Below, one piece after another: positions 3,121-36,495 of a DNA stretch of 64,000 nucleotides. The DNA is taken from IMG/VR virus record IMGVR_UViG_3300033997_000243, positions 1 to 64,000 of that record. One strand, given 5' to 3'. Below the pieces are notes generated by a model that was not told where the DNA came from, ran no database searches, and saw only the letters and a program-made list of their open reading frames with translations. The stretch's first letter is position 1. Each line of letters begins with the position of its first letter. A program made the translations under genes and the position numbers.

Positions 3121-3148
3121 CCTAGTGTATAAACCTAGAGGATTTACC

Positions 3149-4303
3149 ATGTCTAAAAAACTTGTCAGTAAGAAACCCAAAACACTCGAAAGTTACAACC
3201 TTCCTGAAAAATACCGTCCAACAAAACTTTCTGATTATATTGGTCAAACTAGCGCTCAAAATACAATGAGTGGTTGGCTTGAGCGTAAACGCTTTCCCTC
3301 AACAATTTTAATCAGCGGTTTAACTGGTAGTGGAAAGACCACGCTTGCCAAAATGATAGCGCGTTACGTAAACTGTGAAAAGAATACAGCTTGCGGTAAA
3401 TGTGATGCTTGTAAATTCTCTGATGACCAAATTCCAGATTTAATTGAAATCAATGCTGGTGAAGCTGGTAACATAGATGACATTCGCAATCTGTTACAAC
3501 GCGCAAAACGTACACCCCGTTTTAACAAACAAATCATTTTGATTGACGAAGCCCATTTACTTAGTGATAAAGCTGAAAGCACTTTGCTGGTTCCACTAGA
3601 AAAGCCGAGCAAAAACTGCATCTGGATTTTATGTACTACTAATCCAGAAAAACTTAAGAACACAATTCGCAATCGCTGCACACACATAACGCTTAATCCA
3701 ATATCAGCCAAAGAAGTTTATGCTCGTTTAGAGATCATTGTGAGAGAAGAAGGTCTTAAGATTAAAGACAAAGACTTATTCAAAAAATGCCTTAAGCGTA
3801 TTGCCGAACTTTGTGAAGGCCAGATGCGTAATGCAATAAGTATGTTGGACACATTGATCAGCATTGTTTCAAGTGGTAACAAATATGATGAAAGTGTTGT
3901 CAGCGATCTTGGTATGCAAGCAACTGAAGAAGAATTGAATTCTGTTTCTGCTGAAATACTTGTTGCAGTTCTTGGTAACAATTTGTTGGGTATCGTTAAA
4001 AACTGCAAAGGTTGCAAAGAACCTCGTAAACTTATTTCACAACTGCGTTATCTTATTGACTGGCAAATTGAAAGTATTACTGGCATTGCAAAATATGTTC
4101 CAGCCATTGGTAAACTTTTTGTTTCGTCCGTTAATAAAAACAAGGTAAAAGTTTCGTTGCCCGCTTTGTTAAAAGTTCAATCTGTTTTACTTGATGTCGA
4201 TCACAAAATCTTAACGGTTCCGGCTTATCCTGCGGCTGTTGCACTTTATACTGCATTAGCTGATTTAAGTGTTGACGACTATTTTAACAAGGTGAAAAAA
4301 TGA
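3149..4303 (+). CDS. dnaX: Clamp loader AAA+ ATPase, DNA polymerase III gamma/tau-like
   Basis: PEKYRP, Walker A GLTGSGKTT, Zn module C...CGKCDAC, Walker B IDEAH and SRC-equivalent IRNRC. GAGG RBS before ATG 3149. Confidence 0.9.
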   Translation: MSKKLVSKKPKTLESYNLPEKYRPTKLSDYIGQTSAQNTMSGWLERKRFPSTILISGLTGSGKTTLAKMIARYVNCEKNTACGKCDACKFSDDQIPDLIEINAGEAGNIDDIRNLLQRAKRTPRFNKQIILIDEAHLLSDKAESTLLVPLEKPSKNCIWILCTTNPEKLKNTIRNRCTHITLNPISAKEVYARLEIIVREEGLKIKDKDLFKKCLKRIAELCEGQMRNAISMLDTLISIVSSGNKYDESVVSDLGMQATEEELNSVSAEILVAVLGNNLLGIVKNCKGCKEPRKLISQLRYLIDWQIESITGIAKYVPAIGKLFVSSVNKNKVKVSLPALLKVQSVLLDVDHKILTVPAYPAAVALYTALADLSVDDYFNKVKK

Positions 4304-4542
4304 TTGAAGTTCAAAACGAAGCATCCATTTCAATAGCTTTATTTTTACTATGCTTATTTTCTGCGGTTGCTGTACTAGCCTTTGCTGTCTACAAGATTTT
4401 CTTTAGTAATCCTGATCACAAAATCAGCTATCATGAATTTGATAATGGTGTGGAATACGATCATCGTGATACTGGTGCAGAAATGAATGACATTATTTCA
4501 CATGCCGAAAAATCTAGGCAAGGAGATAAGAATGATGGATAA
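4300..4542 (+). CDS. Small membrane protein
   Basis: Hydrophobic segment ISIALFLLCLFSAVAVLAFAVY; ATGA overlap with the upstream gene. Confidence 0.7.
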   Translation: MIEVQNEASISIALFLLCLFSAVAVLAFAVYKIFFSNPDHKISYHEFDNGVEYDHRDTGAEMNDIISHAEKSRQGDKNDG

Positions 4543-19158: not shown

Positions 19159-19929
19159 ATGGCAGGTAAGAAAATAGAATTGTCAGAAATGACTACCAAA
19201 CGAAAAGCCACTTCGGAAAAGAAAAAAGCTAAGGTAGTTGTTAAACAGGAAAAGCCTACTAAAACCAAACCTAAAGTTACTCCACAAGGTAAACCAAAGT
19301 TAAAAACCAAAGAAGTTCCGAAGCCTAAGTTAAAAACCAAAGAAGTTCCGAAGCCTAAGTTAAAAACTAAATCTTCGATTAAAGATAAAAAAGATCTTCC
19401 ATCTAAGTTGACTGGCAAATCTTCAAAATCCTTGCAAGATCTTCAAAAACATAAAGCGGCTTTGGTTGCTGAGGCTAACGGACTTCTTGAGCAAATGGGC
19501 GACAACGTATTCGATGATAATCGTAGATACGTCAATCAATACGAAACAATGTTCAAACAGTTGATAACTATCTCAGACATGGCTGAAAAAAAGTATTTCA
19601 AGAGCAAGGATAGTCGAGACATTTATGCGCTTATGAAAGTTTATGATCAGATGCGCGATGTTATTGCGGATATGAAAAGTTTACAAAATGTTGGCGAATA
19701 CATTGATGCTCTTGTTCAAGATGTTTTGAATCCGTTCGCTATGACTACCTCTCAATCAATTTTGGATTTTGTAAATCATCTTAATTCTTATGTACGAAAA
19801 AACATCCCAACTGATTTGCAAGATGAAGTCATTAAGTATTGTAAAACTCAGGCAAAAGCTTCAGCTGTTAAAATGAAAGAAAGCTATTTAGCCTCCATAG
19901 AAAATACAAAACGTATACTGACAGGTTAA
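19159..19929 (+). CDS. Hypothetical protein with Lys-rich repetitive N-terminus and helical C-terminal domain
   Basis: AGGGG RBS; PKLKTKEVPK repeats. Confidence 0.8.
   Translation: MAGKKIELSEMTTKRKATSEKKKAKVVVKQEKPTKTKPKVTPQGKPKLKTKEVPKPKLKTKEVPKPKLKTKSSIKDKKDLPSKLTGKSSKSLQDLQKHKAALVAEANGLLEQMGDNVFDDNRRYVNQYETMFKQLITISDMAEKKYFKSKDSRDIYALMKVYDQMRDVIADMKSLQNVGEYIDALVQDVLNPFAMTTSQSILDFVNHLNSYVRKNIPTDLQDEVIKYCKTQAKASAVKMKESYLASIENTKRILTG
19297..19367 (+). repeat. Exact 30-bp tandem repeat, about 2.4 copies
   Basis: AAGTTAAAAACCAAAGAAGTTCCGAAGCCT at 19297 and 19327, partial copy at 19357. Confidence 0.95.
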
Positions 19930-19935
19930 ACGCAT

Positions 19936-20301
19936 ATGGGAATTGCTCAGAGAAACCGAGGATTTAAAAAATCCGGCAATAGACTTTCCGGCCCACTTAA
20001 ACCAAAATCCGATTTAAGATCTGGCCCTGAATGGGAAAGAGTAAAAGCTATTGTAAAAGAACGTGATGATTATACTTGTGTTTGTTGTGGTGCTGAGGAT
20101 AATCCTAATAATCCTAGTGCTGTTCAACTGACTGTTGATCACATTGTTCCTGTTGCAAGAGGAGGTTTGAATATTCTTTCAAATCTTGAAACTTTATGCG
20201 CTACCTGTCATTCTAAAAAACGAGGTAAGGCAAATGAGGCAGGTAAACATCTGTTGAAAGCTTTACAAACAAGAAAGAACAAACGTCTATTTGGAGGTTA
20301 A
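19936..20301 (+). CDS. Free-standing Zn-binding HNH endonuclease
   Basis: RDDYTCVCCG...VDHIVP...GG.N..SNL.TLCATCH. Confidence 0.9.
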   Translation: MGIAQRNRGFKKSGNRLSGPLKPKSDLRSGPEWERVKAIVKERDDYTCVCCGAEDNPNNPSAVQLTVDHIVPVARGGLNILSNLETLCATCHSKKRGKANEAGKHLLKALQTRKNKRLFGG

Positions 20302-24400: not shown

Positions 24401-27400
24401 CCTTAGTAAAACAAATACATTCGATTTGACTTTTGGTACGCGCAAAATTAAAATCAGTGGTGGTGTTGAATTCTTAAAACAATTCAATCCTAACTATGTG
24501 TTGCTTGATGAAAGTCATAAAGCAAAAACATTTATGCGTAGTGGCAAGACCTCAACAATTCATACTGTAATCAAAGAAGTATTTACTATGACTGGCGTTG
24601 CTTATGCGCGTTTAGCCACAGGTACTTTGGTTCACGGTATTCTTGCTGATGTTATCGGTCAAGCTGCTTTAATGAATGCTTACGCACTTAAAACTCCTGA
24701 TGAAATGGATAAACTTGGAATCAATCTTTCTGCTGAAGATGGTCCTGGTAAAATGCGTACAAAACTTGGTAAGTATTGCAGCATGATCACTCTGAAACGT
24801 AAAGAGTGGGCGTTCATGTTGCCTAATCCAATTGATACGTTTATTCAAATTCGTTTGTTCGATCCTACAGACGAAACAATGAATAAACTTGGTAACAAGT
24901 TACACCAAGAAGCTTACGAACACGTTATCAACGAAGTTAAATCTATCATTCTTTCTGGTGACATCGGTAAAGCTGATGACGATGAAGATGACGATGATGA
25001 AAACTCTTTCGATGATGAATTGGAAGAAAATGATGACGAAGAAGGTGGCGGTGGTGGTCGTGGAAAAGTTGTTGATGCCAGTGGTGTTATCAATGCTTCT
25101 ATGTTACCTACTATCGACAAAAAATACTTCCAACGTGTTGAGCAGCTAATTACAAATCCTTGGGGTGATTCTTACTTCAAAGAGTTGGCAGCTATTGCTG
25201 GTGTAAGACAAGGCGATTTTGTTCCATCAAAAGTTTCGATGGTAATAGAACGCTTACGTGAACATTTTGAAAGTGTTAAGTATGATGCAAACGCAGATCA
25301 AACTGGACGTATTATTCAGTGGGATCGTGAAATGCAAGCGAAAGAGTACGATATAGTTGAATATAAAGGTCAACTGTATATGCGTCGTCCAATTCCACTT
25401 GGGCCAGACGAATTACCGACTATAAAACGTCGATTGACTCCGAAAACTTCTACGCCACCAGATCAAGATTTGGATAACTGGAAACCGGAGATTAAAGGTA
25501 AGGTACTTATTTTCTGCCGCTACACAGGTAACACGAAATATATTTTCGATTCGTTACCTCCTGAGTACAAACGCAAAGCGCGTATGTTCCACGGTCAGAT
25601 TCCAGAAGATCAACGTAAGCAAAACTTACAAGACTTCATGAAATCAAAAGATGTAGAAATTTTCGTAGCCAACGAACAAGCTATTACAGAAGGTTACAAC
25701 CTTCAAATGGCAAGTCGTATTATTCGTGTTGATACTCCGTGGTCACCAGGTGATTACGAACAAAGTACAGCACGTATTTTCCGTCCAGATCCAGCCGCAG
25801 CAAAATTTACTGATGGTCAACCTGGAGATATGGCGCGTGAAGTTATTTACGTCGATTGGATTATGACTGGCGGTACATTGGAAGTTGGTAAAGTTGCTCG
25901 TTTGATGTGGAAAACTGTTGACAGTATTCGCTTCAATGAAAAAGGCAACAGACGTTATGAACCTTTAAACGAATACGTCTTGAAGCCAATCAAGATGTCT
26001 TTAGACTTGTTGTTTGAGCGCTGTGAATTAGAGGATTACCGTGGTACGTTAGAAGAAACGGAAAATGGTGAAACTCGTATTGTAAACGATTACTTTGGTG
26101 CAAAAGCTTTATTAGCAAACATCGAAGCAAGCGAATTTACGGAAATGCGTAAAACAACTCGTGCGGAAATGTTGGATCTTGATATTCCACCTATTCCAAA
26201 AGATTTCAAAACGATGCCACAAATTCCAACAATGCCGAATCAAAATATTCCTGATCCAGAAGGATTTGGTTTGGTTAAATTGTCAGAATATATTCCAACG
26301 CGCATCGAAGAAATTTTAGAAGATGCAGAAGCAGTGTTGAAAGGTAGTCCAGTTCGTACTGGTTTTGGTACTGGTACAATTGTTGGTTTGCAACGTACTC
26401 GGAAAATTCCTGATCCTGATAATCCAGGAGAAATGATTTCTGATCCACGCAGACCGATTCATAGTGTTCGTATTAAATATCATGAACGTAACATGCTGGA
26501 AAATATACCTCCTGTACTGATGCCTATTAGTATGGTTTATATTGCAACAAAAGTTTCCGGTAAAGTTTATGATCAGTTTTTCAAACCTACAGAAATGTGG
26601 GGAACGAAAACTGAGAAACTTCAGATGGAACGTGCAGCAGCCAAACAACAGGCAGAAGCTGATCGTATTCGCGCTCAGAGAGAACAGGCTGAGGAACAAC
26701 GCATCAAGCAAGAACGTGAAGATGCTCGTCGTCAGACACGCGAACGCGAACGTGCAAATATCCGCAAAGACAACATTGAGAAAAAACGCCCAGTAAATCA
26801 AGGTGTAGAAGTTGTTCCAAAAGTTCCGCGTGTACGGCCAACTGTTAGCGTGGTTCCTGCTGGTACACTTTCAGGTCGTGTTCCACCTAAACGTCCTGTT
26901 GCACCTGCGGCTCCAGCGATTAAACCTAAGAAGATTAAATTAATTCCTTCTTTCTATAACGGCTTATTGTGTATGCACGTTACGAATAATGATGCAGATG
27001 CAGATGGCTTGTTGAAATTTGGCTTCAAAAACTTTGAAGATTTCGTATACGTAGATTTCAAAGCGTTCCCTGCGTACTACGCTTTCTTGAACTGGATTGA
27101 AGAAAAATCAGACAAAGGACAGTTGGAAATTGATGGCCCAACTTATAATCGTTTGGTTGCTGTTTACGATATGTTTAGTGACAAGAAGATCGATCCTAAA
27201 CAACTCTTTAACCAACGTCATGCTAAGAAAATCATGAATGATGTTCAAGATTTTTTCCGTGCGCGTTTGCGTGAAAGCAAGAATACTAAAATGGTTAAAA
27301 TGTATCCGGTAACGATGCACGACCGTTTACGTATTGTTGTGGACAAAGCAACTAACCCATTTGCGAAACGTCTTGAAGGAAAAGCAATTCCTGGTGGCGG

Positions 27401-27557
27401 TGTAGGTGGAACTTGGAAGCTTCATCCTGGTATGCACATTTATTTCGCAGCTGGTAAACGCGAATTCATGAGCAAACTTAAAGAGTTGAAAGAAGCTGGT
27501 TACGTTATCACTAACCAAGATCAACTTGTTGCAAAAATTGATGATTTACGCATGTAA
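21489..27557 (+). CDS. Very large SNF2-family (SF2) helicase/translocase, 2022 aa
   Basis: FPHQ Q-motif, DVSPGGGKT, LLDESH, LATGT, KVLIFC, EGYNLQ.A and QSTARIFR. Long unassigned N- and C-terminal regions. Confidence 0.85.
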   Translation: MAITIDGEFTSTSATAEELLTKAVAPVELDPKLKKLYTEAFYTVNNRPTEAGFKMDGFREAASKTLSVSMGLNNFFAFCRKALEQANILDDMPDSQVTAELQALASNIIQMNEEPSEDMVRHLLIALSTQRDTQSEDAEDSRFPKDMPFEDRPTANTIIKPSSRYKGGYDILFSGQYGRGGLKLHIKPFPALPTRPNDARHLGMMQTNYSTPIAQRIMAAAQKICELVTMRSDKGVLTLDNAHQRRLCQFPVDYNFKSWNSEISKLIGFPLNFFNNLDGSVTLYKSFLNVLVIIEQEPELMQPWASWNSSQTRAQISGTESIEVPRPKNETLITPTVVFTPRVGGSISLSFERAIVNFMCQSETGDKALYCLSSWVTQWAGAFLKPKHAKGINYDPRRTAQYVIPPSRIQELAGYREKFGYHVSESKSDDDGLVIMPDGRFGYIPSPADSSNDNALAYEQAYEEMLSLSYELGLPAGSPAGASVTASNPEKLNIAGTNGLMADKNSKLKSMRGALIAFNWDYNTLLYASETDNLVPKDLNGCTPPDDLIMADFLGFDFKEPGEKSQKKHILTSLSEFRHDPDALHTLTNLNSILQIRKLAPDLNIPEERKKLVDAPIYLRVFLNQRLIKLFETYSFYAKEGVVPNIVQLIEETKKEKNYTSFTLEGTPLDFDLYSNLIPDTIDGSSLLADHLYGQGYVVLAFLLKALADAEGTPGTNLHAMIADEVGFSNVKTELPDHPAHLNFRSADTTMAKFNNIYTYFGGCLFKNMCKHITLIPKKELLYPKRDEKDLNNKNLPSFNYISTDVLPLAYIFSKYVPKALDYFERAEEMFDRYQQDSDVDVEDIVAPGIVAVNGKKPQMFPHQVKAHQFLRKAPKYAILDVSPGGGKTLIGITDILCLAEKHKADHFVPLVLAPDGLCANWCEDTAKFTNGNWNTIPITTKIVKIWGLDLLTKIIKDAPRNTIIVAGIHFLSKTNTFDLTFGTRKIKISGGVEFLKQFNPNYVLLDESHKAKTFMRSGKTSTIHTVIKEVFTMTGVAYARLATGTLVHGILADVIGQAALMNAYALKTPDEMDKLGINLSAEDGPGKMRTKLGKYCSMITLKRKEWAFMLPNPIDTFIQIRLFDPTDETMNKLGNKLHQEAYEHVINEVKSIILSGDIGKADDDEDDDDENSFDDELEENDDEEGGGGGRGKVVDASGVINASMLPTIDKKYFQRVEQLITNPWGDSYFKELAAIAGVRQGDFVPSKVSMVIERLREHFESVKYDANADQTGRIIQWDREMQAKEYDIVEYKGQLYMRRPIPLGPDELPTIKRRLTPKTSTPPDQDLDNWKPEIKGKVLIFCRYTGNTKYIFDSLPPEYKRKARMFHGQIPEDQRKQNLQDFMKSKDVEIFVANEQAITEGYNLQMASRIIRVDTPWSPGDYEQSTARIFRPDPAAAKFTDGQPGDMAREVIYVDWIMTGGTLEVGKVARLMWKTVDSIRFNEKGNRRYEPLNEYVLKPIKMSLDLLFERCELEDYRGTLEETENGETRIVNDYFGAKALLANIEASEFTEMRKTTRAEMLDLDIPPIPKDFKTMPQIPTMPNQNIPDPEGFGLVKLSEYIPTRIEEILEDAEAVLKGSPVRTGFGTGTIVGLQRTRKIPDPDNPGEMISDPRRPIHSVRIKYHERNMLENIPPVLMPISMVYIATKVSGKVYDQFFKPTEMWGTKTEKLQMERAAAKQQAEADRIRAQREQAEEQRIKQEREDARRQTRERERANIRKDNIEKKRPVNQGVEVVPKVPRVRPTVSVVPAGTLSGRVPPKRPVAPAAPAIKPKKIKLIPSFYNGLLCMHVTNNDADADGLLKFGFKNFEDFVYVDFKAFPAYYAFLNWIEEKSDKGQLEIDGPTYNRLVAVYDMFSDKKIDPKQLFNQRHAKKIMNDVQDFFRARLRESKNTKMVKMYPVTMHDRLRIVVDKATNPFAKRLEGKAIPGGGVGGTWKLHPGMHIYFAAGKREFMSKLKELKEAGYVITNQDQLVAKIDDLRM

Positions 27558-28236: not shown

Positions 28237-30201
28237 ATGGCAGTTGTTTCAGCAAAGAAAAAACATGCTAAACAAGAGATTCCACTTCGTTGGATAGACT
28301 TAGGCTATAAACCTAAAAAATCCATAAGGGAGGCTCTTAAGTCACGCTTTTCAGATGGAAATCTGTACAACGTGAAAGCAGTCCGGTATAAAAATCCAGA
28401 TGCTAAGAAAAGAATATTATTTGTACTCGATCATGTACCTACAGAAGATCTTGAGAGCAATCGTTTGCTTTCTGGTGCGACAGGTGAAAAGTTTTTATTG
28501 CTTTGTAAACTTGCACACGAGTATTATAGATCGGAATGTGCTGAAAGTGACTATGATTGGGTAGCAACAAACTTTAATCAGTTTAAAACTTATGGTAAAG
28601 CTTACGCAGATACGCTTGATGAAAGCAATCAGGATTTTGCACGGCATTTAAAGCAAACTATTTGTGAGTACAAGCCTGACATTGTTGTTACATTTGGGCA
28701 AGATCCTTTTACTTATTTGTGTCCACTTGCTTATCAAAAATCTAAGCAGAACTTTGTCAACTACTTAGGTCAAGCTGTTGATGCTAACGTAAGTATAAAG
28801 AATAAAGATGGAAAAACAATAGAGCATGATTTTGTTGTAGTTCCTTCTCTTTCATTTAACACAGTATTTAGCACCAAAACAAAAGAGAATTATTATCTTA
28901 GTGGTTATTCAGCCAGAAATCTTGTAACAGCTCTTGATGGCGGTATTAATCGCTACAACATTCAACCTGTACACATAATGAAACGGAACAAATTCGTTCC
29001 AAAGTATAAAACTCATTATGTGACAAAAGTTTCCGAAGTAGAGCGCATTCTGAAAAAGATGGCTGCTGCTGAATACGTGGCTGTCGATACTGAAACCGAG
29101 GATCTTAGTAAGGTTCTTAATAAAGTTCAGACTGTGCAATTATGTTGTGATGCTAAGAACGCTTATGTAATTCCAATTTATCACTTTGATACTCCATTTA
29201 GTCGTAAGGAGCTTGATCGAATCAAAGTGCTTATGCGAATGTTTTTTGAGAGAAAGAATAAAAACAAGTTGCATATTACCACCAACGGAAAGTTTGACCT
29301 TAATGTAATGAGGGCAAATTTTGACATCAGACATTTCAAAGCTGATATGTGGGATATTGCGGCTGGTGAATTCATCTTAGATGAAAACATGAAAGTGTTA
29401 TCTACTGCTACAGGTAAAGGTTACTTTAATTTAGGTAATCTTTCAATGCAGTATGGATGCACTGCTTTCCTTGACAATCCATTTGGTAAAGAAAATCGCG
29501 CACACATTGCACAAACTCCATTGACTGAACCTGTACTTCAATATTGTAGTCTCGACGTTGTTGTTCCTTGGTTGATCTTTCATCAGCAATTACGCAGAGC
29601 GAAAGATATTGGATTTAAAAAGTACCAGAAAACAGTTTCAACCATTGTTGGAGATCAGATACATTCGTTCTCTATTTTGGAATCTACTGGTGCGCTTTGT
29701 GATGTTGATTACTTGTTCTATCTAAAAACAAAAGATAGTCCAGTGAACCAAATCATTAAGGAACGTGAACTCAATATTAAAAACAGCGATGAAGTTCGTA
29801 AAGCCAATAAGATTCTGGCTAAGAATCGTGGTGCGCCTCAACGCGGATTGTTTGGTACTGTTGAACTGAACAACTTTGATCTTAGCAAAGAAGAACATAA
29901 ACAAATATTGTTCTTTGACGTTTGTAAATTGGAACCAGTAAACTTTTCTACCAAGAAAAAGCGTAAAGGTACTGACCAGCCAATGCCTCAGATTGATAAA
30001 CAATTTCAGGCCAAGCACAAAGACGTTAAAATCGTTAAGAACTTCACGGATTTACAAAAAGCTCAGAAGTTACGAAACAGTTATGTGAATAGTTTTATTA
30101 AATTGTTTGCTACTGATAAAGACTTCAAGCACACACGTAGATTAAGACCTAACTATAGTTACCAAGCTGTTGTTACTGGTCGGACGAGTGCATCAAATCC
30201 T
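28237..30201 (+). CDS. polA: Family A DNA polymerase, exon 1 (UDG-like domain, 3'-5' exonuclease, thumb)
   Basis: ExoI AVDTET, ExoII NGKFD, ExoIII YCSLD. Ends at TGRTSASNP, which continues as NLQQVP in exon 2; spliced product 1089 aa. Confidence 0.9.
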
Positions 30202-31058
30202 AGATTGGGCTTCATGTAGGAAACTGCATGTCGAAAGCTACCTAAACGGGGAAGAGTCCTGTGTAGAGAATACATGGGAAGAACCCCGTAGCAAAGAATG
30301 TTATACGTGATATAGTCTTAACCAGAGGAGTAAGATTATGTTACTGACCGCGACTAAATTTCATGGTATTTTTATAAATAAAAGGACAAAGAAGGTATAC
30401 TCTAAACGATCTGGAAGTTTAAAAGAGTTAAAGCAATCCCATGTCTATGATAAAAGGAAGAGAAAACCTAAACCATATATTCAGGTTGGCGTTCCAGAAT
30501 GTACCCTTCTTCATAGAATTATCGCCTATACTTTTATCGGAAATGCTGATGGTTTGACTGTTAATCATAAAAACGGCAATACATTAGATAACCGAATCAA
30601 AAATTTAGAGATAGTGACCCTTGAGCAAAATCTTTTGCATGCAAAAGAAACCGGTTTACTATCGAAAGGCGAAAGTCACGGGAGATCTTTATACAAAGAC
30701 TCTTTATTACTAAAAGCATTGAAGAGAATATCTTCTGGTTTTTCTGTCAAAAGCACCGCTGAAAAATATAAAGTAAGCCAAAGTTATTTAAACAAAGTTA
30801 AAAACGGCGTTTACAGACGAGACTTATTAAATCGCGTATAACAGGAAAAGCTCTAACGACTATCGCTGAAATGCGAGTAGGGTGATAAGCAAATGATCAC
30901 TCCAAACGGTAGCGGCCTACGTTTATTGAAAAATAAATATGGCCTTGATATAGTCTCAACTTCCATTTGTAAAGAATGGAGCGATGTGTAAGACGAGGAT
31001 TGCTGAAACTCGCATCATCGGGATATGTTTTGCGAACATATCTTAAGAAAGAATAAAG
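30202..31058 (+). mobile_element. Self-splicing group I intron (IA2-like, 857 nt)
   Basis: Exon ends in U (30201) and intron ends in G (31058). IGS AGAUUGGG pairs with ligated exons CCU|AAUCU. P2 has a GAAA loop; P3 GCTACC/GGTAGC; P7 GACTA (30858)/TAGTC (30951); P7.1, P7.2, P8 and P9 stems visible. Splicing restores PNLQ in frame. Confidence 0.93.
30338..30841 (+). CDS. Intron-encoded HNH homing endonuclease (I-HmuI-like HNH core)
   Basis: LHRIIA.TF...VNHKNG...DN...NLE.VT..QN..HA with a C-terminal HTH-like segment; GAGGAG RBS; lies in the P6a loop. Confidence 0.9.
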   Translation: MLLTATKFHGIFINKRTKKVYSKRSGSLKELKQSHVYDKRKRKPKPYIQVGVPECTLLHRIIAYTFIGNADGLTVNHKNGNTLDNRIKNLEIVTLEQNLLHAKETGLLSKGESHGRSLYKDSLLLKALKRISSGFSVKSTAEKYKVSQSYLNKVKNGVYRRDLLNRV

Positions 31059-32363
31059 AATCTCCAGCAAGTACCTAGCCGTGATGAATTAGGCTACCAT
31101 ATTAAACGTCTGCTTATTTCTCAACCTGGAACATTATTGATCAAGGTTGACTACTCGGCTCACGAAGTACGTGGTTGGTCTATTATTAGTGGCGATAAAA
31201 ATGTTGCTGATGTTTTCCAAGTTGGTGCTGATTTACGTAATCGCTATAAGTTTGTTCCAGATCCTTGGATTGCTCACCGAATAGAAATTGAAGGTGACGT
31301 TCACCGTATCAACGCTAGTTACTTCTTTGGACTTCCAATCCATGAAGTAAGTAAGCCTATTCGTAACGCAGTAAAAACAGTTATCTTCGGTTTGATTTAT
31401 CAACAAGGTGATGATGGTTTATCCTTATCTACTGGTCAGACTGTTGAGAAAATTCGTGAACTTAAAGCGAAGTTTCTTGAAAGATTCCCTGTTGGTTACG
31501 GTTGGTTTGATACCTGTAAGAAAGATGCGGTTGACAATTTGTTTGTTGAAAGTCCTGTTGGTCGTCGTCGTACATTATGGCCACTGATGTTCAAGAAACT
31601 TGTTGATCGTCAAACTGATTACAGAAGCAAGGACAAACATTTAAACAGTATTATCAATCGTTGTTTACGTCAAGCGGTTAACAGTCCAGTTCAAGGTTTT
31701 GGTAGTGACCTTATGATGTTGGCAATACGTTTGATTGATAAATACAAATATCAACATTTCTTGGACACTGGTAAATATCCATTAATGAACCTTAATGTTT
31801 CCGTACACGACAGTTTAACTGTTGAAGTTGGTTACGAGTGGTTCTGGTTAGCAGTTAAATTTATCGAACGTGCTATGACTACTGGAGCTAAAACTCTGGT
31901 AGAAGAAAAGTTTGATTATAAATTTACTAGCGCACCTGAAATGGATTTTGATATTGGTGGAAACGAGCGGGATGTTAAGGCGTGGAACTTTAGTTTCTTA
32001 AGTATGGAAGCTTTAGTTCGTAAGAGTCTTGAGTTCCAAAGTAAAGAATTGGGCCACAAAGTAAACATTGATAAAGTTGTAGATACTATCATGCAAGATC
32101 AGTATGCTGATATGCCTGAGTGGTTACAAAAACAATTGTGGGCTAATAACATCAAAATCAGAAGTATGCCAAAGAAAAATCCTTTGACTAAAGAGGAAAT
32201 CAAATTGGCTGCTGTTTACGCAAAAGAAACTCGTAGTAACAAAGTTTTACTTGACAAGGCGATTGCTGAAATTGAAGCAAGCAAGAAAAAAGCTGCTAAA
32301 ACAGAATCAACTAGAAGTGAGACAGTTGCTGCGGCCAAGAAGAAACTTAAGGAAGCGGCCTAA
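31059..32363 (+). CDS. polA: Family A DNA polymerase, exon 2 (polymerase domain)
   Basis: NLQQVP, motif A DYSAHEVR, motif B RNAVKTVIFGLIY (Phe at the E. coli 762 position), NSPVQG and motif C VHDS. Confidence 0.92.
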   Translation, partial: NLQQVPSRDELGYHIKRLLISQPGTLLIKVDYSAHEVRGWSIISGDKNVADVFQVGADLRNRYKFVPDPWIAHRIEIEGDVHRINASYFFGLPIHEVSKPIRNAVKTVIFGLIYQQGDDGLSLSTGQTVEKIRELKAKFLERFPVGYGWFDTCKKDAVDNLFVESPVGRRRTLWPLMFKKLVDRQTDYRSKDKHLNSIINRCLRQAVNSPVQGFGSDLMMLAIRLIDKYKYQHFLDTGKYPLMNLNVSVHDSLTVEVGYEWFWLAVKFIERAMTTGAKTLVEEKFDYKFTSAPEMDFDIGGNERDVKAWNFSFLSMEALVRKSLEFQSKELGHKVNIDKVVDTIMQDQYADMPEWLQKQLWANNIKIRSMPKKNPLTKEEIKLAAVYAKETRSNKVLLDKAIAEIEASKKKAAKTESTRSETVAAAKKKLKEAA

Positions 32364-32384
32364 TTAGGCCGCTATGGTTCTTTT

Positions 32385-32759
32385 ATGTTAGAGCAAATTC
32401 TCAAAAAACATTTCCCCGATATTACTGCTGAAACTTTGGCCGAAGTTACGTCAGAGATTAAAAAACAACAGGCTACGGATGCAGCAAATCTTTTGAATCA
32501 TATGCTGGAAAAAGATCCTCGCGCTGTCTCCGCTTTATTATCCACAAATTTCATTTGCAGTCTTGCTATTGCAGATACAGATGTTTTCGCTACCCAACTT
32601 AATCAAGATCTTTGCAGTTTAGGAATTCTTGGACTACTTCAGGGAGTTATTGGTAGCGAAAATATAATTCGCGCTATCCCACATGACGTAGTTGGCTTGA
32701 ATACCGTTTCAGTTGTTCGTTATTTTACAATACAACCTAATACGGAGCAAACATCTTGA
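32385..32759 (+). CDS. Hypothetical protein
   Basis: 124-aa ORF between the polymerase and the clamp. Confidence 0.7.
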   Translation: MLEQILKKHFPDITAETLAEVTSEIKKQQATDAANLLNHMLEKDPRAVSALLSTNFICSLAIADTDVFATQLNQDLCSLGILGLLQGVIGSENIIRAIPHDVVGLNTVSVVRYFTIQPNTEQTS

Positions 32760-33877
32760 GTAATGTATTTGTTGTTGATGGGAAAGAATTAAAGGAAGCA
32801 CTTGATCGAGTTGTACTAACAGTTCCTGTTGGTGAACTCACTCACTACGGTTTTGTTTTTGGTAAAAAAGCCGTTAAGTTGGTTGCTATGGATTCAGACC
32901 GTGTTGCTTCAGTTGTTCTTACCCCGAAAAGATTTAAAGGCGAAGGAGAATTCTTCTTTGCCGATGCTGTTACATTGAAAACAGCTGTTAATGGTCGTGA
33001 TGAAGTTACTATTGAATTCACCCATGATAAAATAGTGTTTTCTGCTGGCCGATTCAAAGGCGATTTAAAACGTAGCGAACCCGGAGCTTCAGCTCTTGCA
33101 GATTTAAAACTTGGATCAAGTATTGACACTGATTCAAGTATAGCAATCGATAAAGATTTTTTCGGTTCATTGGGTGATGGCGTTAAAGTTGCACGTTTAA
33201 AAGATCCATATAACGATAATTACATTCCATCGGCAACAATTGTTTATGATGGTAAGTATTTAACGGTAATGGGTAATGATGATTATCACTTGCATATATA
33301 CAAGCGAAAAATCAAGTCTAAGACTGCGCCTTTGAAACTCACAATACCTATAGGTATTTTTTCTATTTTAGATCGCATTATCAAAGATGATGCTAAATTC
33401 TTTATTACGGACGAGCGTTTGTTTATTCGTGGTAAAAACATAACTGTTTCTTTGCCCCCAATAGATACTGAAGTAAACTTGGAGCAAATAGAAAATTTCT
33501 TGGCTGGACTTAAAAAACCAATCAAATCTTTTACAATAGGTTCTGATTTCGCAACTGCTTTTCAGAACATTGCTGGTTATTTTAAGAAGGGGGTTTCTTC
33601 GCTTTTAATTAAAACCAACAAAGATCGAATCCAGTTACACTATCAAAATGATGGTGGTTCAATTGAAGATGTTGTAAAAGTCAAGGACGCAAAAGGATCA
33701 GAATTTAGCGCTCAAATAGATCCAGTTATCTTTGAGGACAGTTATAAAAACATTCGAGGCTGTAAGAAAATCGAGTTTTCTGTTTATCCTAACAAGCAAG
33801 GAGATCCTGCCTGTTATAAAATGGAAACTGAATTTTCTGATGGAGTCTTGGTAGCTTACGGATATTTCAAAGAATGA
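32756..33877 (+). CDS. dnaN: DNA sliding clamp, DnaN/beta-like
   Basis: 373 aa (beta-clamp size); N-terminal F.VD.KELKEAL.RV; VAMDSDR and VMGNDDYHL resemble the beta ATDxxRL segments. Clamp loader present in the window. Confidence 0.7.
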   Translation: MSNVFVVDGKELKEALDRVVLTVPVGELTHYGFVFGKKAVKLVAMDSDRVASVVLTPKRFKGEGEFFFADAVTLKTAVNGRDEVTIEFTHDKIVFSAGRFKGDLKRSEPGASALADLKLGSSIDTDSSIAIDKDFFGSLGDGVKVARLKDPYNDNYIPSATIVYDGKYLTVMGNDDYHLHIYKRKIKSKTAPLKLTIPIGIFSILDRIIKDDAKFFITDERLFIRGKNITVSLPPIDTEVNLEQIENFLAGLKKPIKSFTIGSDFATAFQNIAGYFKKGVSSLLIKTNKDRIQLHYQNDGGSIEDVVKVKDAKGSEFSAQIDPVIFEDSYKNIRGCKKIEFSVYPNKQGDPACYKMETEFSDGVLVAYGYFKE

Positions 33878-34287
33878 TTATTCGAGATCCTAGATTACCC
33901 TTCAGTATTAGAAAAATGCCGTTGAACACTTTTATTGTTCTCGGCGTTGATTCTAAAAATAAAACTCAGTTGCTTTATGTTACATCAAACGAAAAAAGCA
34001 CTGTTTCAATCGACAGAGACAGTGTTCTTGAATATGGGCCTCATTGCAAATGTTATCCCATAGTCAGCGCAACAAATGCTATAGTGGGATCTCTCCTTTT
34101 AATCGATACTCACTATCTTGAATTTAAAACATCGCACGTTATGGTAACGCGAAAGTCTGAAATAGGATCTTACACGCTTAAACAGGCTGAAGGTGTTGGT
34201 GGACTCATGACTTTTATTGATGAATACGACAACGTATTGATTGTTCCTTATGATCCAACTAACAGCAAACTCACTGTAACTGATTAA
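33874..34287 (+). CDS. Hypothetical protein
   Basis: ATGA overlap; 137-aa ORF. Confidence 0.7.
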   Translation: MIIRDPRLPFSIRKMPLNTFIVLGVDSKNKTQLLYVTSNEKSTVSIDRDSVLEYGPHCKCYPIVSATNAIVGSLLLIDTHYLEFKTSHVMVTRKSEIGSYTLKQAEGVGGLMTFIDEYDNVLIVPYDPTNSKLTVTD

Positions 34288-34297
34288 AGGTGATATA

Positions 34298-34834
34298 GTG
34301 GATAAGCAAACACGCGAAAGAGTAAAGAGAATCCTTAAAAAAGACGCAAAGCTTTTACGTTTGAAACAGACGTTTCAAGATTTGCCTCAATACAATTTGG
34401 ACTTTGATGAATTAAAGCAGGAAATGAAGCACTTGCATTCAAGTCGCAAACTTCATTCACTCGAAGTTAATAGCCCTAACTTCGTTCGCAACTTAAGTAA
34501 GGCAGCTATTTTAGATCATAGCTTTCGTACACGCCTCACCGAAATTCAGGTTATGGGTTTAGAGGCAACAACTCTTTTATCCAAAACTCTGAACAGTATG
34601 GTCGATTATTTGGTTAATGAATATGCCAATGATCTTGCAAAGTTGCGTACAAAAGAAGAAAGAAAACAATTCGTAGTTGGTATCATGGAACCTTACTATG
34701 AATATTTGATTGATGCTGAGCAGTTGCTTCAAATCTGTAAATCTTACATTGACAACATTGATAAAGGCGGATTCATGATAACGCAGTTAGTTAACGCGCA
34801 TCAGGTTATCCGTAAATTTGAAGGTAACACTTAA
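34298..34834 (+). CDS. Hypothetical helical protein (possibly UvsY-like)
   Basis: AAGGTG RBS and GTG start. All-helical and coupled to a UvsW-like helicase; the UvsY call is context inference only. Confidence 0.5.
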   Translation: MDKQTRERVKRILKKDAKLLRLKQTFQDLPQYNLDFDELKQEMKHLHSSRKLHSLEVNSPNFVRNLSKAAILDHSFRTRLTEIQVMGLEATTLLSKTLNSMVDYLVNEYANDLAKLRTKEERKQFVVGIMEPYYEYLIDAEQLLQICKSYIDNIDKGGFMITQLVNAHQVIRKFEGNT

Positions 34835-36495
34835 TGAGTAAGCCACCATTGGTGCTACGAGAACATATCTATATACCAGTGAAGGTTGTTGATATGGATC
34901 TTGCGGAAAAGCATTATATTAAACATTTTTACGAAGAAAAAGTTTGTCGTCGTTGCCCTTATAAACGAGATCGTTTCTCAGAGTTCTGCGCTAACTGCGA
35001 ACTTGGCGGTTATAAAGGTGGCGTTAATTTATTAAAACGTAAAATGGTTGGTGGCACAAACTACGTTGGATTTCCAATAGGTGATCGCTTAAACCTTGAA
35101 GATAAAATTGATATTGATTTTGATGATTTTAAAATCATTGATAAGCGTAAGCGTGTTCCAATGGACAAACGCATAAAGTTTGTTAGTGAATTGAGAGATT
35201 ATCAAATAGAAATTCTTGGTGATTGGAGTAAAGCCAAACATGGCTTGTTAAAAGCTCCACCAAGATCTGGTAAAACAATAACAACATTAGCTATTGCAAT
35301 AAAGATGGGCCAGCGCACAGTTATTATTGCTGACCAAAAAGATTTCCTTGACAACTTTTTAGAGGAAATGGAAGCACATACAAACATCAAACAAATTCAG
35401 GAATTGGCTGGTAAAAAGATCTACGGATTTCTCAAGAAAAAAGAGGACTTTGAGAATTTTCAAATAGGCTTAGCTACCTACCAAAGTTTCATCAAAGATA
35501 GTGGTATGAGTGAGAAGCGGTTAAAGTGGCTTAAAGACAATTTTGGTATGGTATGGTGTGATGAAATTCACCGTGCTAACGCAACACTTTACGCAAAATT
35601 TATCAGTAAGCTTCCGGCACTTTATAAAGGCGGCTGCACCGCGACGGACGTTAGAAAGGACGGACGGCACATAATTATTGAAAATTTAGTTGGCCCAGTT
35701 GTTGCTGAAACTACTGTAGACAGCATGAAACCTGTTGTTACAGTTCACGCAACAGACTGTGCGCCAAAGAACAGAAATAGTTATACTCGTGGGCCAGCTG
35801 CTTGGACATACGCAAACAGATTTTTATCCAAACATCCAGCACGTAATAAAAAAATCATTGAAGGAGTTGTGCATGATTTAAGAGCAGGACGCTCAATTGT
35901 TATGGCTGTTATGTTCAAGGAGCATGTTAAAGAATTGGTCGATGGAATCAATAATGCTTTTGGTGAAAAAATTGCAATTGGCTTTACTGGCGGTGGCGGC
36001 GAAAAGAACAAACGTGAACGTATTCAAATAATTCAAGATGCTCGTGCTGGAAAAGTTCGGGTTGTTGTAGGTATCAGACGTTTAATGCAATTGGGTTTGA
36101 ATGTTCCACGTTGGGACACTCTTTATATGGTTTCTCCAATTAGCAACAAGCCTAACTGGGAACAAGAGTCTCGCCGTATCTGTACTCCAATGGAAGGAAA
36201 GAAGCAACCACTTATTCGTATGTTTGTTGATATTGACATGCCCATTAGTTTTGGTTGTTTTAAAAATACCTTGGGACATAGTATAGAACTTGGCTATCGT
36301 TTAAGCAAAAAAGCAAACAGAGTTTATGGAAGTTTGCTTGATAAAAAGCTACAACGTCCTGATAACGATTCTGGAATGTACGACAGTGAAGAACGTGATG
36401 CGTACTCCGAACGCAAATCTAACAAGAAGAAAAAATCTGGCCCCAATATTGAACGTGGTTTGTTTTCTATGTTTGGAAATATGGCTAAAAAATGA
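34834..36495 (+). CDS. SF2 DNA helicase, UvsW/RadD-like
   Basis: LRDYQ, APPRSGKT, DEIH, TAT..RKDG, GLNVP..D and QESRRI. Confidence 0.9.
   Translation: MSKPPLVLREHIYIPVKVVDMDLAEKHYIKHFYEEKVCRRCPYKRDRFSEFCANCELGGYKGGVNLLKRKMVGGTNYVGFPIGDRLNLEDKIDIDFDDFKIIDKRKRVPMDKRIKFVSELRDYQIEILGDWSKAKHGLLKAPPRSGKTITTLAIAIKMGQRTVIIADQKDFLDNFLEEMEAHTNIKQIQELAGKKIYGFLKKKEDFENFQIGLATYQSFIKDSGMSEKRLKWLKDNFGMVWCDEIHRANATLYAKFISKLPALYKGGCTATDVRKDGRHIIIENLVGPVVAETTVDSMKPVVTVHATDCAPKNRNSYTRGPAAWTYANRFLSKHPARNKKIIEGVVHDLRAGRSIVMAVMFKEHVKELVDGINNAFGEKIAIGFTGGGGEKNKRERIQIIQDARAGKVRVVVGIRRLMQLGLNVPRWDTLYMVSPISNKPNWEQESRRICTPMEGKKQPLIRMFVDIDMPISFGCFKNTLGHSIELGYRLSKKANRVYGSLLDKKLQRPDNDSGMYDSEERDAYSERKSNKKKKSGPNIERGLFSMFGNMAKK

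What the first reader, a model, noticed from the sequence alone, without database searches (positions are those of the whole stretch)
29839..36465. Clamp-binding-like motif QRGLF in the Pol A thumb and ERGLF in the helicase tail
Seen: QRGLF at 29839-29853 lies just before FDLSKEEHKQILF, the equivalent of the Pol I thumb FNL.S..QL..ILF segment. ERGLF at 36451-36465 lies in the disordered C-terminus of the UvsW-like helicase. The HNH at 19936 ends in KRLFGG, a weaker match. Established: beta-clamp partners use QL[S/D]LF-type pentapeptides, and T7 polymerase carries its thioredoxin-binding processivity loop at this thumb position. Inference: this Pol A gains processivity by docking on the phage DnaN-like clamp through a thumb-tip peptide, and RGLF is a phage-specific clamp code shared with the helicase.
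Basis: partly seen in the sequence, partly recalled or inferred. Interest (0 to 1): 0.65.

Follow-up and report, generated by a model that had tools for sequence, protein, structure and literature searches.

The report
Clamp-docking loop on phage polymerase thumb
A jumbo phage's DNA polymerase has a deeply conserved Gly-Leu-Phe-Gly loop on its thumb, at the spot where T7 polymerase binds thioredoxin; modelling puts this loop in the peptide pocket of the phage's own DnaN-type sliding clamp, and a similar motif ends the neighbouring helicase.

Summary
The window is the start of a complete 319.5-kb jumbo phage of the Lu11/PaBG/Erwinia-Y3 group. It encodes a family A polymerase, a true DnaN-type beta clamp and a DnaX-like clamp loader.

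In the polymerase the conserved unit is P-x-x-G-L-[FWMY]-G, not QRGLF. It holds in 120 homologues down to 37% identity and in relatives as distant as RSL1 and RHEph12. Q and R vary. The motif lies in the linker just before FDLSK/helix H1, the point where the T7 thioredoxin-binding domain ends.

A complex model of the clamp dimer with the thumb scored ipSAE 0.66, against 0.00 for the best control. Its most confident contacts are G537, L538 and F539 in the clamp cleft that maps onto the E. coli beta peptide pocket.

Helicase tails cannot be aligned, yet GLF sits in the last 20 residues of 27 of 120 homologues (shuffles average 0.5). Their docking could not be modelled.

The HNH ending KRLFGG is absent from orthologues and is probably chance.

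Verdict: a likely internal clamp-binding loop, a new variant of a known kind. It rests on computation only. "RGLF code" overstates the shared core, which is hydrophobic-aromatic-Gly.

The parts
28237..30207 (+). Family A DNA polymerase, exon 1: N-terminal domain, 3'-5' exonuclease and thumb, ending in ...TGRTSASNP
   Evidence: Pfam DNA_pol_A_exo1 1e-13 and DNA_pol_A. phrog_17 1e-45. AF2 model pLDDT 93 with Foldseek top hits to Klenow and other Pol I structures. An uninterrupted homologue, P0008, aligns up to 30207.
29827..29874 (+). Thumb linker, residues 531-546, between helix H (518-530) and FDLSK/helix H1 (552-562). It occupies the position of the T7 thioredoxin-binding domain.
   Evidence: AF2 secondary structure; pLDDT dips to 79-86 here against above 90 on either side. 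T7 and E. coli anchors: G-to-F spacing is 62 residues here, 34 in E. coli Pol I and 103 in T7.
29836..29856 (+). Candidate clamp-binding motif P-Q-R-G-L-F-G (residues 534-540). Conserved core: P-x-x-G-L-[FWMY]-G.
   Evidence: Column counts in 120 homologues, distant phages and 67 IMG/VR loci. The lowest-error contacts with the clamp are at G537, L538 and F539.
30208..31058 (+). 851-nt intervening sequence that splits the polymerase gene inside SASNP|NLQQ. Probably a group I intron.
   Evidence: tblastn with the uninterrupted P0008. Exon 2 reading. Exon 1 ends in T and the insert ends in G. Weak Rfam Intron_gpI match at 30815-30981, E 0.24, below the family's threshold.
30338..30841 (+). HNH endonuclease ORF inside the intervening sequence
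   Evidence: Pfam HNH_3 1e-10. phrog_59 3e-27.
31059..32363 (+). Polymerase exon 2: palm and fingers, then a Lys-rich C-terminal tail ending in ...KEAA
   Evidence: Pfam DNA_pol_A 3e-29. Translation.
32756..33877 (+). Phage DnaN-type beta sliding clamp, 373 aa. Predicted peptide cleft: residues 152-155, 174-179, 244, 248, 279-280, 322, 353, 368-373.
   Evidence: phrog_947 6e-11. A 115-sequence profile hits T. maritima DnaN at 1e-20 over its full length. AF2 pLDDT 93, Foldseek TM about 0.8 to E. coli and B. subtilis DnaN. Interface and mapping to E. coli residues.
34834..36495 (+). SF2 helicase, 553 aa, of XPB/Rad25-UvsW type, with a Cys-rich N-terminus and a Lys-rich C-terminal tail
   Evidence: Pfam ResIII 1e-16 and Helicase_C. 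phrog_16 2e-43. Closest solved relatives are XPB/Rad25. NCBIfam XPB match is well below the family cut-off.
36457..36477 (+). Helicase C-terminal motif G-L-F-S-M-F-G (residues 542-548), a candidate second clamp-binding peptide
   Evidence: Translation. Motif enrichment in homologue tails. The helicase is the only gene family near the polymerase with a real terminal enrichment.
3125..4303 (+). DnaX-like (gamma/tau N-terminal) clamp-loader ATPase
   Evidence: PF13177 1.4e-29 and PF00004 2.7e-16. TIGR02397 dnaX_nterm 2.8e-58, below the equivalog cut-off.
19936..20301 (+). HNH endonuclease ending in KRLFGG. Listed because the finding names it; I do not count it as part of the system.
   Evidence: Pfam HNH 7e-13. 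The ending is absent from the NCTB, HRDY3 and Lu11 orthologues and from 34 of 34 distinct IMG/VR tails.

Best explanation
The polymerase is the replicative family A enzyme of a Lu11/PaBG-type jumbo phage. It is tethered to the phage's own DnaN-type ring, which a phage DnaX-like loader puts on DNA. The tether is an internal clamp-binding peptide, P-x-x-G-L-[FWMY]-G, displayed on the linker between thumb helices H and H1. L538 and F539 insert into the hydrophobic cleft between clamp domains II and III, next to the clamp's C-terminus, as the last two residues of bacterial QL[SD]LF motifs do. The loop lies at the thumb tip over the exiting duplex, so a ring behind the polymerase can reach it. T7 polymerase uses the same port to hold thioredoxin. 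The SF2 helicase three genes downstream probably uses a related C-terminal peptide, after a Lys-rich linker, to bind the same cleft. That would make the clamp a shared platform.

Shown here: the motifs, their conservation, the clamp and loader identities, and the positional equivalence with the T7 TBD. Predicted only: the docking. Inferred: the gain in processivity and clamp binding by the helicase.
For: - Clamp identity: profile hit to DnaN at 1e-20; fold TM about 0.8 to E. coli and B. subtilis DnaN.
- Loader: PF13177 1.4e-29 and a dnaX_nterm match at 2.8e-58.
- Gene order: polymerase, small ORF, clamp, two small ORFs, helicase. This order holds in NCTB, Yoloswag, Y3, PaBG, Sen-NF, fHe-Yen9-02 and Lu11.
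- A clamp homologue was found in all five phage records searched whole, including BcepSauron, RSL1 and RHEph12.
- Motif conservation: G537 117/120, L538 103/120, aromatic or Met at 539, G540 110/120, while the flanking residues vary. It is kept as SLFG, GLFG and FLFG in RSL1, RHEph12 and BcepSauron, whose thumbs are 27-33% identical to this one, and in all 67 IMG/VR loci.
- The loop has the lowest confidence inside an otherwise very confident domain (pLDDT 79-86), as an exposed loop would.
- Position: the loop directly precedes FDLSK, as T7 TBD 262-338 directly precedes FNPSS (PMC10201439).
- Complex model of clamp x2 plus polymerase residues 486-636: ipSAE 0.62, 0.66 and 0.71 (median 0.66); best of 3 controls 0.00. 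In the tool's calibration 58 of 80 solved complexes and 2 of 110 mismatched pairs reached this mark. The runs agree in at least 70% of contacts and the partner's pLDDT is at least 70. The interface is polymerase 528, 531-534, 536-539, 542, 544-546 and 548. Of the 25 lowest-error pairs listed, 17 involve G537, L538 or F539; the rest involve neighbouring loop residues.
- The clamp contacts map by HMM alignment to E. coli R152, T172, G174, H175, R176, L177, N320 and S346, plus the C-terminal residues. From established knowledge, these line the E. coli peptide cleft.
- Helicase: GLF in the last 20 residues of 27/120 homologues against 0.5 in shuffles; [GS][LIM]F in 47/120 against 1.7. No other gene family near the polymerase shows a real terminal enrichment.
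Against: - Nothing has been measured.
- The complex tool warns that a pass may reflect memory of the many solved clamp-peptide complexes. It also notes that my own alignments and the two-copy set-up differ from its calibration.
- The invariant Pro and two Gly residues, and the short beta-bridges in the monomer model, would also fit a purely structural turn.
- The predicted clamp contact residues are not more conserved than the rest of the clamp (mean information 1.60 against 1.51 bits, permutation p about 0.27). H178 (108/115), D322 and aromatic residues at 152 and 248 do stand out.
- The canonical Gln of bacterial motifs is not conserved.
- One relative has GLRG (Sen-NF) and one has GLLR (P0124).
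- I saw no clean covariation between the residue at 539 and the pocket residues that is independent of phylogeny.
- The helicase motif is degenerate. It is absent or replaced by endings such as ...RRL or ...RSL in many homologues, and it was not docked.
Confidence: 0.6

Rival explanations
1. The G-L-F-G turn is a structural or DNA-contacting element of the thumb. It might cap helix H or pack against H1 to position the basic thumb tip on the duplex. It would then be conserved for folding or DNA binding. The docking would be an artefact of a model that places any exposed Leu-Phe into a beta-clamp pocket.
For: Pro534, Gly537 and Gly540 are the most invariant positions, which is typical of tight turns. 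The monomer model gives short beta-bridges and a fairly high pLDDT of 79-86. The pocket is not significantly conserved. The tool itself warns about memory of solved complexes.
Against: Two adjacent large hydrophobic residues are kept for 120 homologues on the least confident loop of the domain. All three controls scored 0.00, including the same thumb against an unrelated protein. The interface does not involve the hydrophobic helix H1. The same tripeptide is enriched at helicase C-termini, where it can have no structural role. The site is a known port for a processivity factor in T7.
Confidence: 0.2
2. The loop is a docking peptide for a different partner. Candidates are the host's DnaN, the conserved small proteins encoded between polymerase and helicase (32385-32759, 33874-34287, 34298-34834), or a replicative helicase or primase, as the T7 TBD also contacts gp4 and gp2.5.
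For: The T7 TBD is a hub for several partners (established knowledge). The small ORFs are syntenic across the group. The phage clamp's cleft maps onto the E. coli beta cleft, so the motif could also fit a host beta clamp.
Against: The phage encodes its own clamp and loader in every relative I checked. The specific model with that clamp passes its controls. No alternative partner was tested, so this rival is weakened only indirectly.
Confidence: 0.12
3. The likeness between the polymerase loop and the helicase tail is coincidental. The helicase tail motif (G..F-G after a Lys-rich stretch) serves something else, such as DNA or SSB binding, contact with the polymerase, or packaging or localisation.
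For: The exact [QE]RGLF match is limited to the closest relatives. Helicase motifs vary widely (GFISRFG, GGRRFG, LGMRRF, GRPFG). In the Lu11 clade the motif lies 25-30 residues from the end. No docking was run. The tail holds a second conserved acidic motif, D-S-G-M-Y-D-S-E, which suggests a more complex tail.
Against: A C-terminal, disordered, basic-flanked hydrophobic-aromatic peptide is the classic architecture of a clamp client. Enrichment is strong and specific to this gene family. The helicase is encoded next to the clamp throughout the group.
Confidence: 0.35

Closest known systems
Bacterial beta-clamp-binding motifs (consensus QL[SD]LF, e.g. E. coli Pol II QLGLF; also Pol III alpha, Pol IV, delta, Hda, MutL)
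   Same: A short peptide whose last two hydrophobic residues enter the cleft between DnaN domains II and III. The predicted clamp contacts map to E. coli T172, G174, H175, R176, L177, N320 and S346. G-L-F matches positions 3-5 of the Pol II motif (from my own knowledge).
   Different: Gln is not conserved (16/120). Invariant Gly residues flank the Leu-aromatic pair. The peptide is internal, on a folded thumb, not at a terminus. The client is a family A replicase and the clamp is phage-encoded.
T7 gp5 thioredoxin-binding domain
   Same: The same port: the segment between thumb helix H and FN.SS/helix H1 (PMC10201439). Its proposed role is the same, to hold a processivity factor over the exiting duplex.
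   Different: T7 has about 70 extra residues and binds host thioredoxin. Here there are about 28 extra residues in the segment, with a 16-residue linker, and the partner is a ring clamp. No sequence homology was detected. The only resemblance is T7 P-K-V-G-G-I-F against the subclade form P-E-K-V-G-G-W.
M. tuberculosis Pol I internal clamp-binding motif QLSLLDD, residues 457-463 (bioRxiv 10.64898/2026.09.19.751633)
   Same: A family A polymerase that binds a DnaN clamp through an internal, lineage-specific motif in its Klenow part, at the canonical cleft.
   Different: That motif is canonical in sequence, lies at a different place in the protein and belongs to a cellular repair polymerase with the host clamp. 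It has been shown experimentally. The case here is computational.
T4/RB69 gp43 C-terminal tail bound to the gp45 clamp
   Same: A phage replicase tethered to a phage-encoded clamp by a short hydrophobic peptide. Other phage proteins reuse the same clamp site (established knowledge).
   Different: Family B polymerase, trimeric PCNA-like clamp, motif at the C-terminus.
PhiKZ Rhc, a clamp-derived subunit that works with the polymerase thumb (PMC13648687)
   Same: A jumbo-phage replicase whose thumb cooperates with a clamp-related protein on the exiting duplex.
   Different: Family B split polymerase, a single clamp-like domain and no ring. It is an unrelated phage lineage.

Membership tests
Beta-clamp-binding motif (CBM) clients | Pentapeptide or hexapeptide matching QL[SD]LF or QxxLxL, with a conserved Gln | tested here: not met
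   Gln at 535 in only 16 of 120 homologues. The conserved core is G-L-[FWMY]-G. Only the two C-terminal hydrophobic positions fit the consensus.
Beta-clamp-binding motif (CBM) clients | Motif conserved among orthologues while its flanks vary | tested here: met
   Polymerase. Helicase: GLF in 27/120 tails against 0.5 in shuffles.
Beta-clamp-binding motif (CBM) clients | Motif lies in an exposed or disordered segment | tested here: inconclusive
   Polymerase loop: local pLDDT minimum of 79-86, with no helix. Helicase tail: Lys-rich, unalignable, and lying beyond the Helicase_C domain.
Beta-clamp-binding motif (CBM) clients | Binds the hydrophobic cleft between DnaN domains II and III | tested here: inconclusive
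   Prediction only. ipSAE median 0.66 against 0.00 for the best control; 58/80 solved complexes and 2/110 mismatched pairs reached that mark. The runs agree in at least 70% of contacts and the partner's pLDDT is at least 70. Contacts map to the E. coli cleft. No binding experiment. The helicase was not modelled.
T7-type thioredoxin-binding domain | Insertion between thumb helix H and helix H1 | tested here: met
   T7 residues 262-338 end at FNPSS; here the loop ends at FDLSK. G-to-F spacing is 62 residues here, 34 in E. coli and 103 in T7. PMC10201439 confirms the TBD position.
T7-type thioredoxin-binding domain | A domain of about 70 residues, homologous to the T7 TBD, that binds thioredoxin | tested here: not met
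   The linker is only 16 residues, with about 28 extra residues in the segment. The family HMM does not align to the T7 thumb. Thioredoxin binding was not tested.
DnaN beta sliding clamp (ORF 32756-33877) | Sequence and fold of the three-domain beta clamp | tested here: met
   Profile against the PDB: 1vpk at 9.8e-21 over positions 5-355. Foldseek TM 0.75-0.82 to many DnaN structures. Pfam and NCBIfam models give no hit, so it is highly divergent.
DnaN beta sliding clamp (ORF 32756-33877) | Head-to-tail dimer ring loaded by a DnaX-type loader | not tested
   Two copies were folded, but only the partner chain was scored. A loader gene is present. Delta and delta-prime equivalents were not sought.
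Family A DNA polymerase | 3'-5' exonuclease and Pol A catalytic domains | tested here: met
   Pfam PF01612 and PF00476. Profile hit to Klenow at 2e-44. Fold match. The gene is interrupted at SASNP|NLQQ by an 851-nt insert. Splicing was not shown.
   The SF2 core is confirmed (ResIII and Helicase_C). The closest solved sequences are archaeal and eukaryotic XPB/Rad25. PaBG's annotators call the orthologue uvsW. I made no direct comparison with UvsW.

The most novel reading that the evidence does not exclude
The H-H1 linker of the family A thumb is a general, evolvable port for processivity factors. In this large jumbo-phage clade it carries a non-canonical (Gln-less) beta-clamp motif, which would make these phages use a hybrid replisome of T7-type polymerase, bacterial-type clamp and loader. 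The T7 thioredoxin-binding domain, which holds P-K-V-G-G-I-F, would then be an expanded descendant of such a clamp-binding loop, retargeted from a ring to thioredoxin.
Probability: 0.12. Interest if true: 0.8.

Novelty: new variant of a known kind. Interest (0 to 1): 0.6.

Why it matters
Family A replicases are textbook examples of clamp-independent polymerases. T7 borrows thioredoxin, T5 is processive on its own, and E. coli Pol I is said to lack a clamp motif (bioRxiv 10.64898/2026.09.19.751633).

A whole clade of jumbo phages (Lu11, PaBG, Erwinia Y3, Yoloswag, RSL1 and related phages) encodes a family A polymerase together with a DnaN-type clamp and a DnaX-type loader. The PaBG paper lists these genes (PMC7412058). 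A 2021 jumbo-phage survey reported the loader but no detectable clamp for such phages (PMC7824862). In the literature I could search, nobody says how this polymerase and ring connect.

A conserved thumb loop at the T7 thioredoxin port would give a concrete mechanism that mutants can test. It would be a case of convergent use of one structural port for two unrelated processivity factors. It would also define a Gln-less motif that could be used to look for other clamp clients in these phages.

Tried and rejected
1. HNH ending KRLFGG as a third client: rejected. The ending is absent from the NCTB, HRDY3 and Lu11 orthologues and from 34 of 34 distinct IMG/VR orthologue tails.
2. A genome-wide scan for further clients with loose terminal patterns gave many hits and nothing convincing. 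The one other family with apparent enrichment (19159-19929) has an alignable C-terminal helix with a clade-specific IFS, not a linear motif.
3. Conservation of the predicted clamp pocket: not significant (p about 0.27).
4. Covariation between polymerase residue 539 and the pocket residues or helicase tails across 67 loci: each clade has its own combination, and I found no signal independent of phylogeny.
5. Looking for relatives that have this polymerase but no clamp, to test co-absence: none found. All five whole records searched, including the three most distant, hold a clamp, as do 63 of 67 IMG/VR loci within 10 kb.
6. The search for related loci with the clamp alignment failed because no stretch is conserved enough. 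I used the polymerase alignment instead.
7. The family HMM did not align the T7 thumb. A single-sequence search of the thumb against the PDB gave only E about 0.9 and a misregistered alignment to Bst. I therefore fixed the position with the two anchors NG..D and FN.SS.
8. Model coordinates are not exposed, so I could not compute solvent accessibility for L538 and F539.

Full report
WHAT IS THERE

The window is the first 64 kb of a complete 319,518-bp virus record with terminal repeats. The polymerase has 45-52% identical relatives in Phage NCTB, Erwinia phages Yoloswag and Y3, the SNUABM phages and Dickeya phages AD1 and JA11. More distant relatives occur in Lu11, PaBG, Xanthomonas, Burkholderia, Ralstonia RSL1, Vibrio and Rhizobium jumbo phages.

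They belong to the ORFs 28237-30219 (660 aa) and 34834-36495 (553 aa).

THE GENES

- ORF 28237-30219 carries a 3'-5' exonuclease and the start of a family A polymerase domain. ORF 31137-32363 carries the rest.
- An uninterrupted homologue, P0008 (81% identical), aligns to 28258-30207 and then to 31059-32324. The gene is therefore split inside the conserved SASNP|NLQQ motif by 851 nt that hold an HNH ORF (30338-30841).
- Exon 1 ends in T and the insert ends in G. Rfam gives only a weak group I intron match (E 0.24). The last five residues of the 660-aa ORF (RLGFM) are read-through into this insert.
- ORF 32756-33877 has no Pfam or NCBIfam hit. A profile of 115 relatives matches T. maritima DnaN at 9.8e-21 over its full length. 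Its AF2 model (pLDDT 93) superposes on E. coli and B. subtilis DnaN with TM about 0.8. It is a divergent but genuine beta clamp.
- A DnaX-like loader lies at 3125-4303 (PF13177 1.4e-29, dnaX_nterm 2.8e-58).
- The helicase is an SF2 enzyme whose closest solved relatives are XPB/Rad25.
- The order giant SNF2-like protein, (lysozyme), polymerase, small ORF, clamp, two small ORFs, helicase is kept in NCTB, Yoloswag, Y3, PaBG, Sen-NF, fHe-Yen9-02 and Lu11.
- The PaBG paper already lists a UDG-exo-Pol I, a Pol III beta and a Pol III gamma as hallmarks of this group (PMC7412058). A 2021 survey reported an RFC-like loader but no detectable clamp in such phages (PMC7824862).

THE POLYMERASE MOTIF

In 120 homologues down to 37% identity the column counts are P534 112, G537 117, L538 103, position 539 F70/W22/M14/L7/Y6 and G540 110. 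Positions 535, 536 and 541 vary freely, and Q535 is kept in only 16. A subclade reads V-G-G-W.

The most distant phage relatives keep the motif as SLFG (RSL1), GLFG (RHEph12) and FLFG (BcepSauron). So do all 67 IMG/VR loci. The conserved unit is therefore P-x-x-G-L-aromatic-G. The Q and R that made it resemble a bacterial motif are features of the closest relatives only.

WHERE IT SITS

The AF2 model of the 660-aa ORF (pLDDT 93) has helix 518-530, a non-helical stretch 531-551 with the lowest confidence inside the domain (79-86), then helix 552-562, which is the EEHKQILFF segment.

The profile aligns FDLSK to Klenow FNLSS. In T7 gp5, residues 262-338, the thioredoxin-binding domain, run straight into FNPSS at 334-338. 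I counted from the conserved NG..D strand to the Phe of FN.SS. The spacing is 34 residues in E. coli Pol I, 62 here and 103 in T7. Czernecki et al. state that the TBD precedes helix H1 (PMC10201439).

DOES IT DOCK ON THE CLAMP?

I chose the whole subdomain rather than a peptide so that the hydrophobic helix H1 (QILFF) stayed buried.

- The tool's verdict is that the model supports binding but does not show it. ipSAE was 0.62, 0.66 and 0.71 (median 0.66), and the best of three controls scored 0.00.
- In the tool's calibration 58 of 80 solved complexes and 2 of 110 mismatched pairs reached this mark.
- The runs agree in at least 70% of contacts and the partner's pLDDT is at least 70.
- The interface on the polymerase is 528, 531-534, 536-539, 542, 544-546 and 548, which is the loop and nothing else.
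- Of the 25 lowest-error pairs listed, 17 involve G537, L538 or F539; the others involve neighbouring loop residues.
- On the clamp the interface is 152-155, 174, 176-179, 244, 248, 279-280, 322, 353 and 368-373.
- An HMM alignment maps these clamp residues to E. coli R152, Y153, T172, G174, H175, R176, L177, N320 and S346, plus the C-terminal residues. From established knowledge these line the peptide cleft of E. coli beta.

Caveats. The tool warns that likeness to solved clamp-peptide complexes can produce a pass from memory, and that my alignments and the two-copy set-up differ from its calibration. The pocket residues as a set are not more conserved than the rest of the clamp (p about 0.27). 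H178 (108/115), D322 and aromatic residues at 152 and 248 do stand out.

THE HELICASE TAIL

Homologue tails cannot be aligned and are Lys-rich. Even so, GLF falls in the last 20 residues of 27 of 120 homologues. Shuffled tails give a mean of 0.5 and a maximum of 4, and the two preceding windows hold 1 and 0. [GS][LIM]F is found in 47 of 120 against 1.7 in shuffles.

The variants include GFISRFG, GGRRFG, LGLGFG, LG[LM]RRF, GRPFG and GGMFGGMFS. What they share with the polymerase is a hydrophobic-aromatic-Gly core, not RGLF.

Among 24 gene families within 10 kb of the polymerase in the 67 loci, only the helicase shows a real terminal enrichment: 15 of 43 distinct tails against 2.1 in shuffles. 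The one other apparent hit is an alignable helix. This architecture is typical of a clamp client, but I could not model it, so clamp binding by the helicase remains an inference.

THE HNH

KRLFGG is present but absent from every orthologue examined. I treat it as chance.

MECHANISM AND RIVALS

The most likely reading (about 0.6) is as follows. The DnaX-like loader places the phage DnaN ring on primed DNA. The polymerase holds the ring through L538 and F539 of the thumb loop in the domain II/III cleft. The helicase competes for, or shares, the second cleft of the dimer through its tail.

- Rival 1 (about 0.2): the turn is structural or contacts DNA, and the docking reflects model memory.
- Rival 2 (about 0.12): the loop binds another partner, such as host DnaN or one of the small syntenic proteins.
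- Separately (about 0.35): the helicase motif may serve a different purpose even if the polymerase loop does bind the clamp.

COMPARISON AND NOVELTY

The loop works like a bacterial clamp-binding motif but fails the sequence definition because it has no conserved Gln. It occupies the T7 TBD port but is not a TBD.

The nearest precedent for an internal clamp motif in a family A polymerase is the 2026 preprint on M. tuberculosis Pol I, with QLSLLDD at a different site. I found no paper that links the polymerase and clamp of this phage group mechanistically. The searchable library excludes most subscription journals.

I rate it a new variant of a known kind, with interest 0.6. The evidence is computational throughout.

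Noticed in passing
window 30208-31058 (HNH ORF 30338-30841): The polymerase gene is split inside SASNP|NLQQ by an 851-nt insert with splice-site features of a group I intron (exon ends in T, insert ends in G) and only a weak Rfam match. Window 30197-30260, spanning the 5' junction, is 98% identical over 64 nt to Erwinia phage pEa_SNUABM_40, whose polymerase protein is only about 45% identical. That points to a mobile intron shared across distant phages. Salmonella phage Sen-NF is also annotated with a two-part polymerase.
   Followed up: partly
window 32250-32363 (end of polymerase exon 2): The polymerase C-terminal tails are Lys-rich. In 41 of 104 full-length homologues they end in Ala-Ala, most often KAA or EAA (shuffled tails: mean 1.4, maximum 7). 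The window's tail ends in ...KEAA. This may be a second terminal linear motif with an unknown partner.
   Followed up: partly
window 36367-36390 (helicase residues 512-519): The helicase tail holds a second conserved motif, D-S-G-M-Y-D-S-E (G-[LMI]-[YF]-D-S type), upstream of the Lys-rich linker. It occurs in 13 of 120 homologues (shuffles 0.17), and looser Y-S-E-S-E forms occur in others. It is another Gly-hydrophobic-aromatic element, this time in an acidic context.
   Followed up: partly
L009 (T7 gene 5), residues 292-298: The T7 thioredoxin-binding domain contains P-K-V-G-G-I-F. This resembles the P-E-K-V-G-G-W form of the loop in one subclade of these polymerases and P-x-x-G-L-F-G in the rest. 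It lies 36 residues before FNPSS, not 8 as in the window's polymerase. It could be chance or a relic.
   Followed up: no
window 3125-4303: A DnaX-like (gamma/tau N-terminal) clamp-loader ATPase is encoded about 25 kb upstream of the polymerase-clamp block. I did not look for delta or delta-prime equivalents.
   Followed up: partly
window 21489-27557: A 2022-aa protein with an SNF2-like helicase segment (weak DpdE and DrmD matches around residues 1333-1432) sits upstream of the polymerase block, with one or two small genes (lysozyme in several relatives) between, in every relative checked. Those records annotate it as an ATP-dependent DNA helicase.
   Followed up: no
helicase homologues P0179, P0185, P0222; loci L007, L028, L044, L073: Several orthologues of the helicase carry intein domains (PF14890) or are annotated in two pieces (fHe-Yen9-02). 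Their ORF tails look like intein or homing-endonuclease sequence. The replication genes of this group appear to be hot spots for selfish elements.
   Followed up: no
window 28237-28950 (polymerase residues ~45-240): The polymerase has an N-terminal alpha/beta domain of about 200 residues before the exonuclease. The PaBG paper and Czernecki et al. describe a family 4 UDG-like domain in such polymerases. Pfam gave no UDG hit here at E 0.01.
   Followed up: no
L011 (BcepSauron) 4124-4450: BcepSauron encodes a thioredoxin about 6 kb upstream of its polymerase, which carries the F-L-F-G form of the loop. This is probably unrelated (nucleotide metabolism), but it is worth noting given the T7 parallel.
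   Followed up: no
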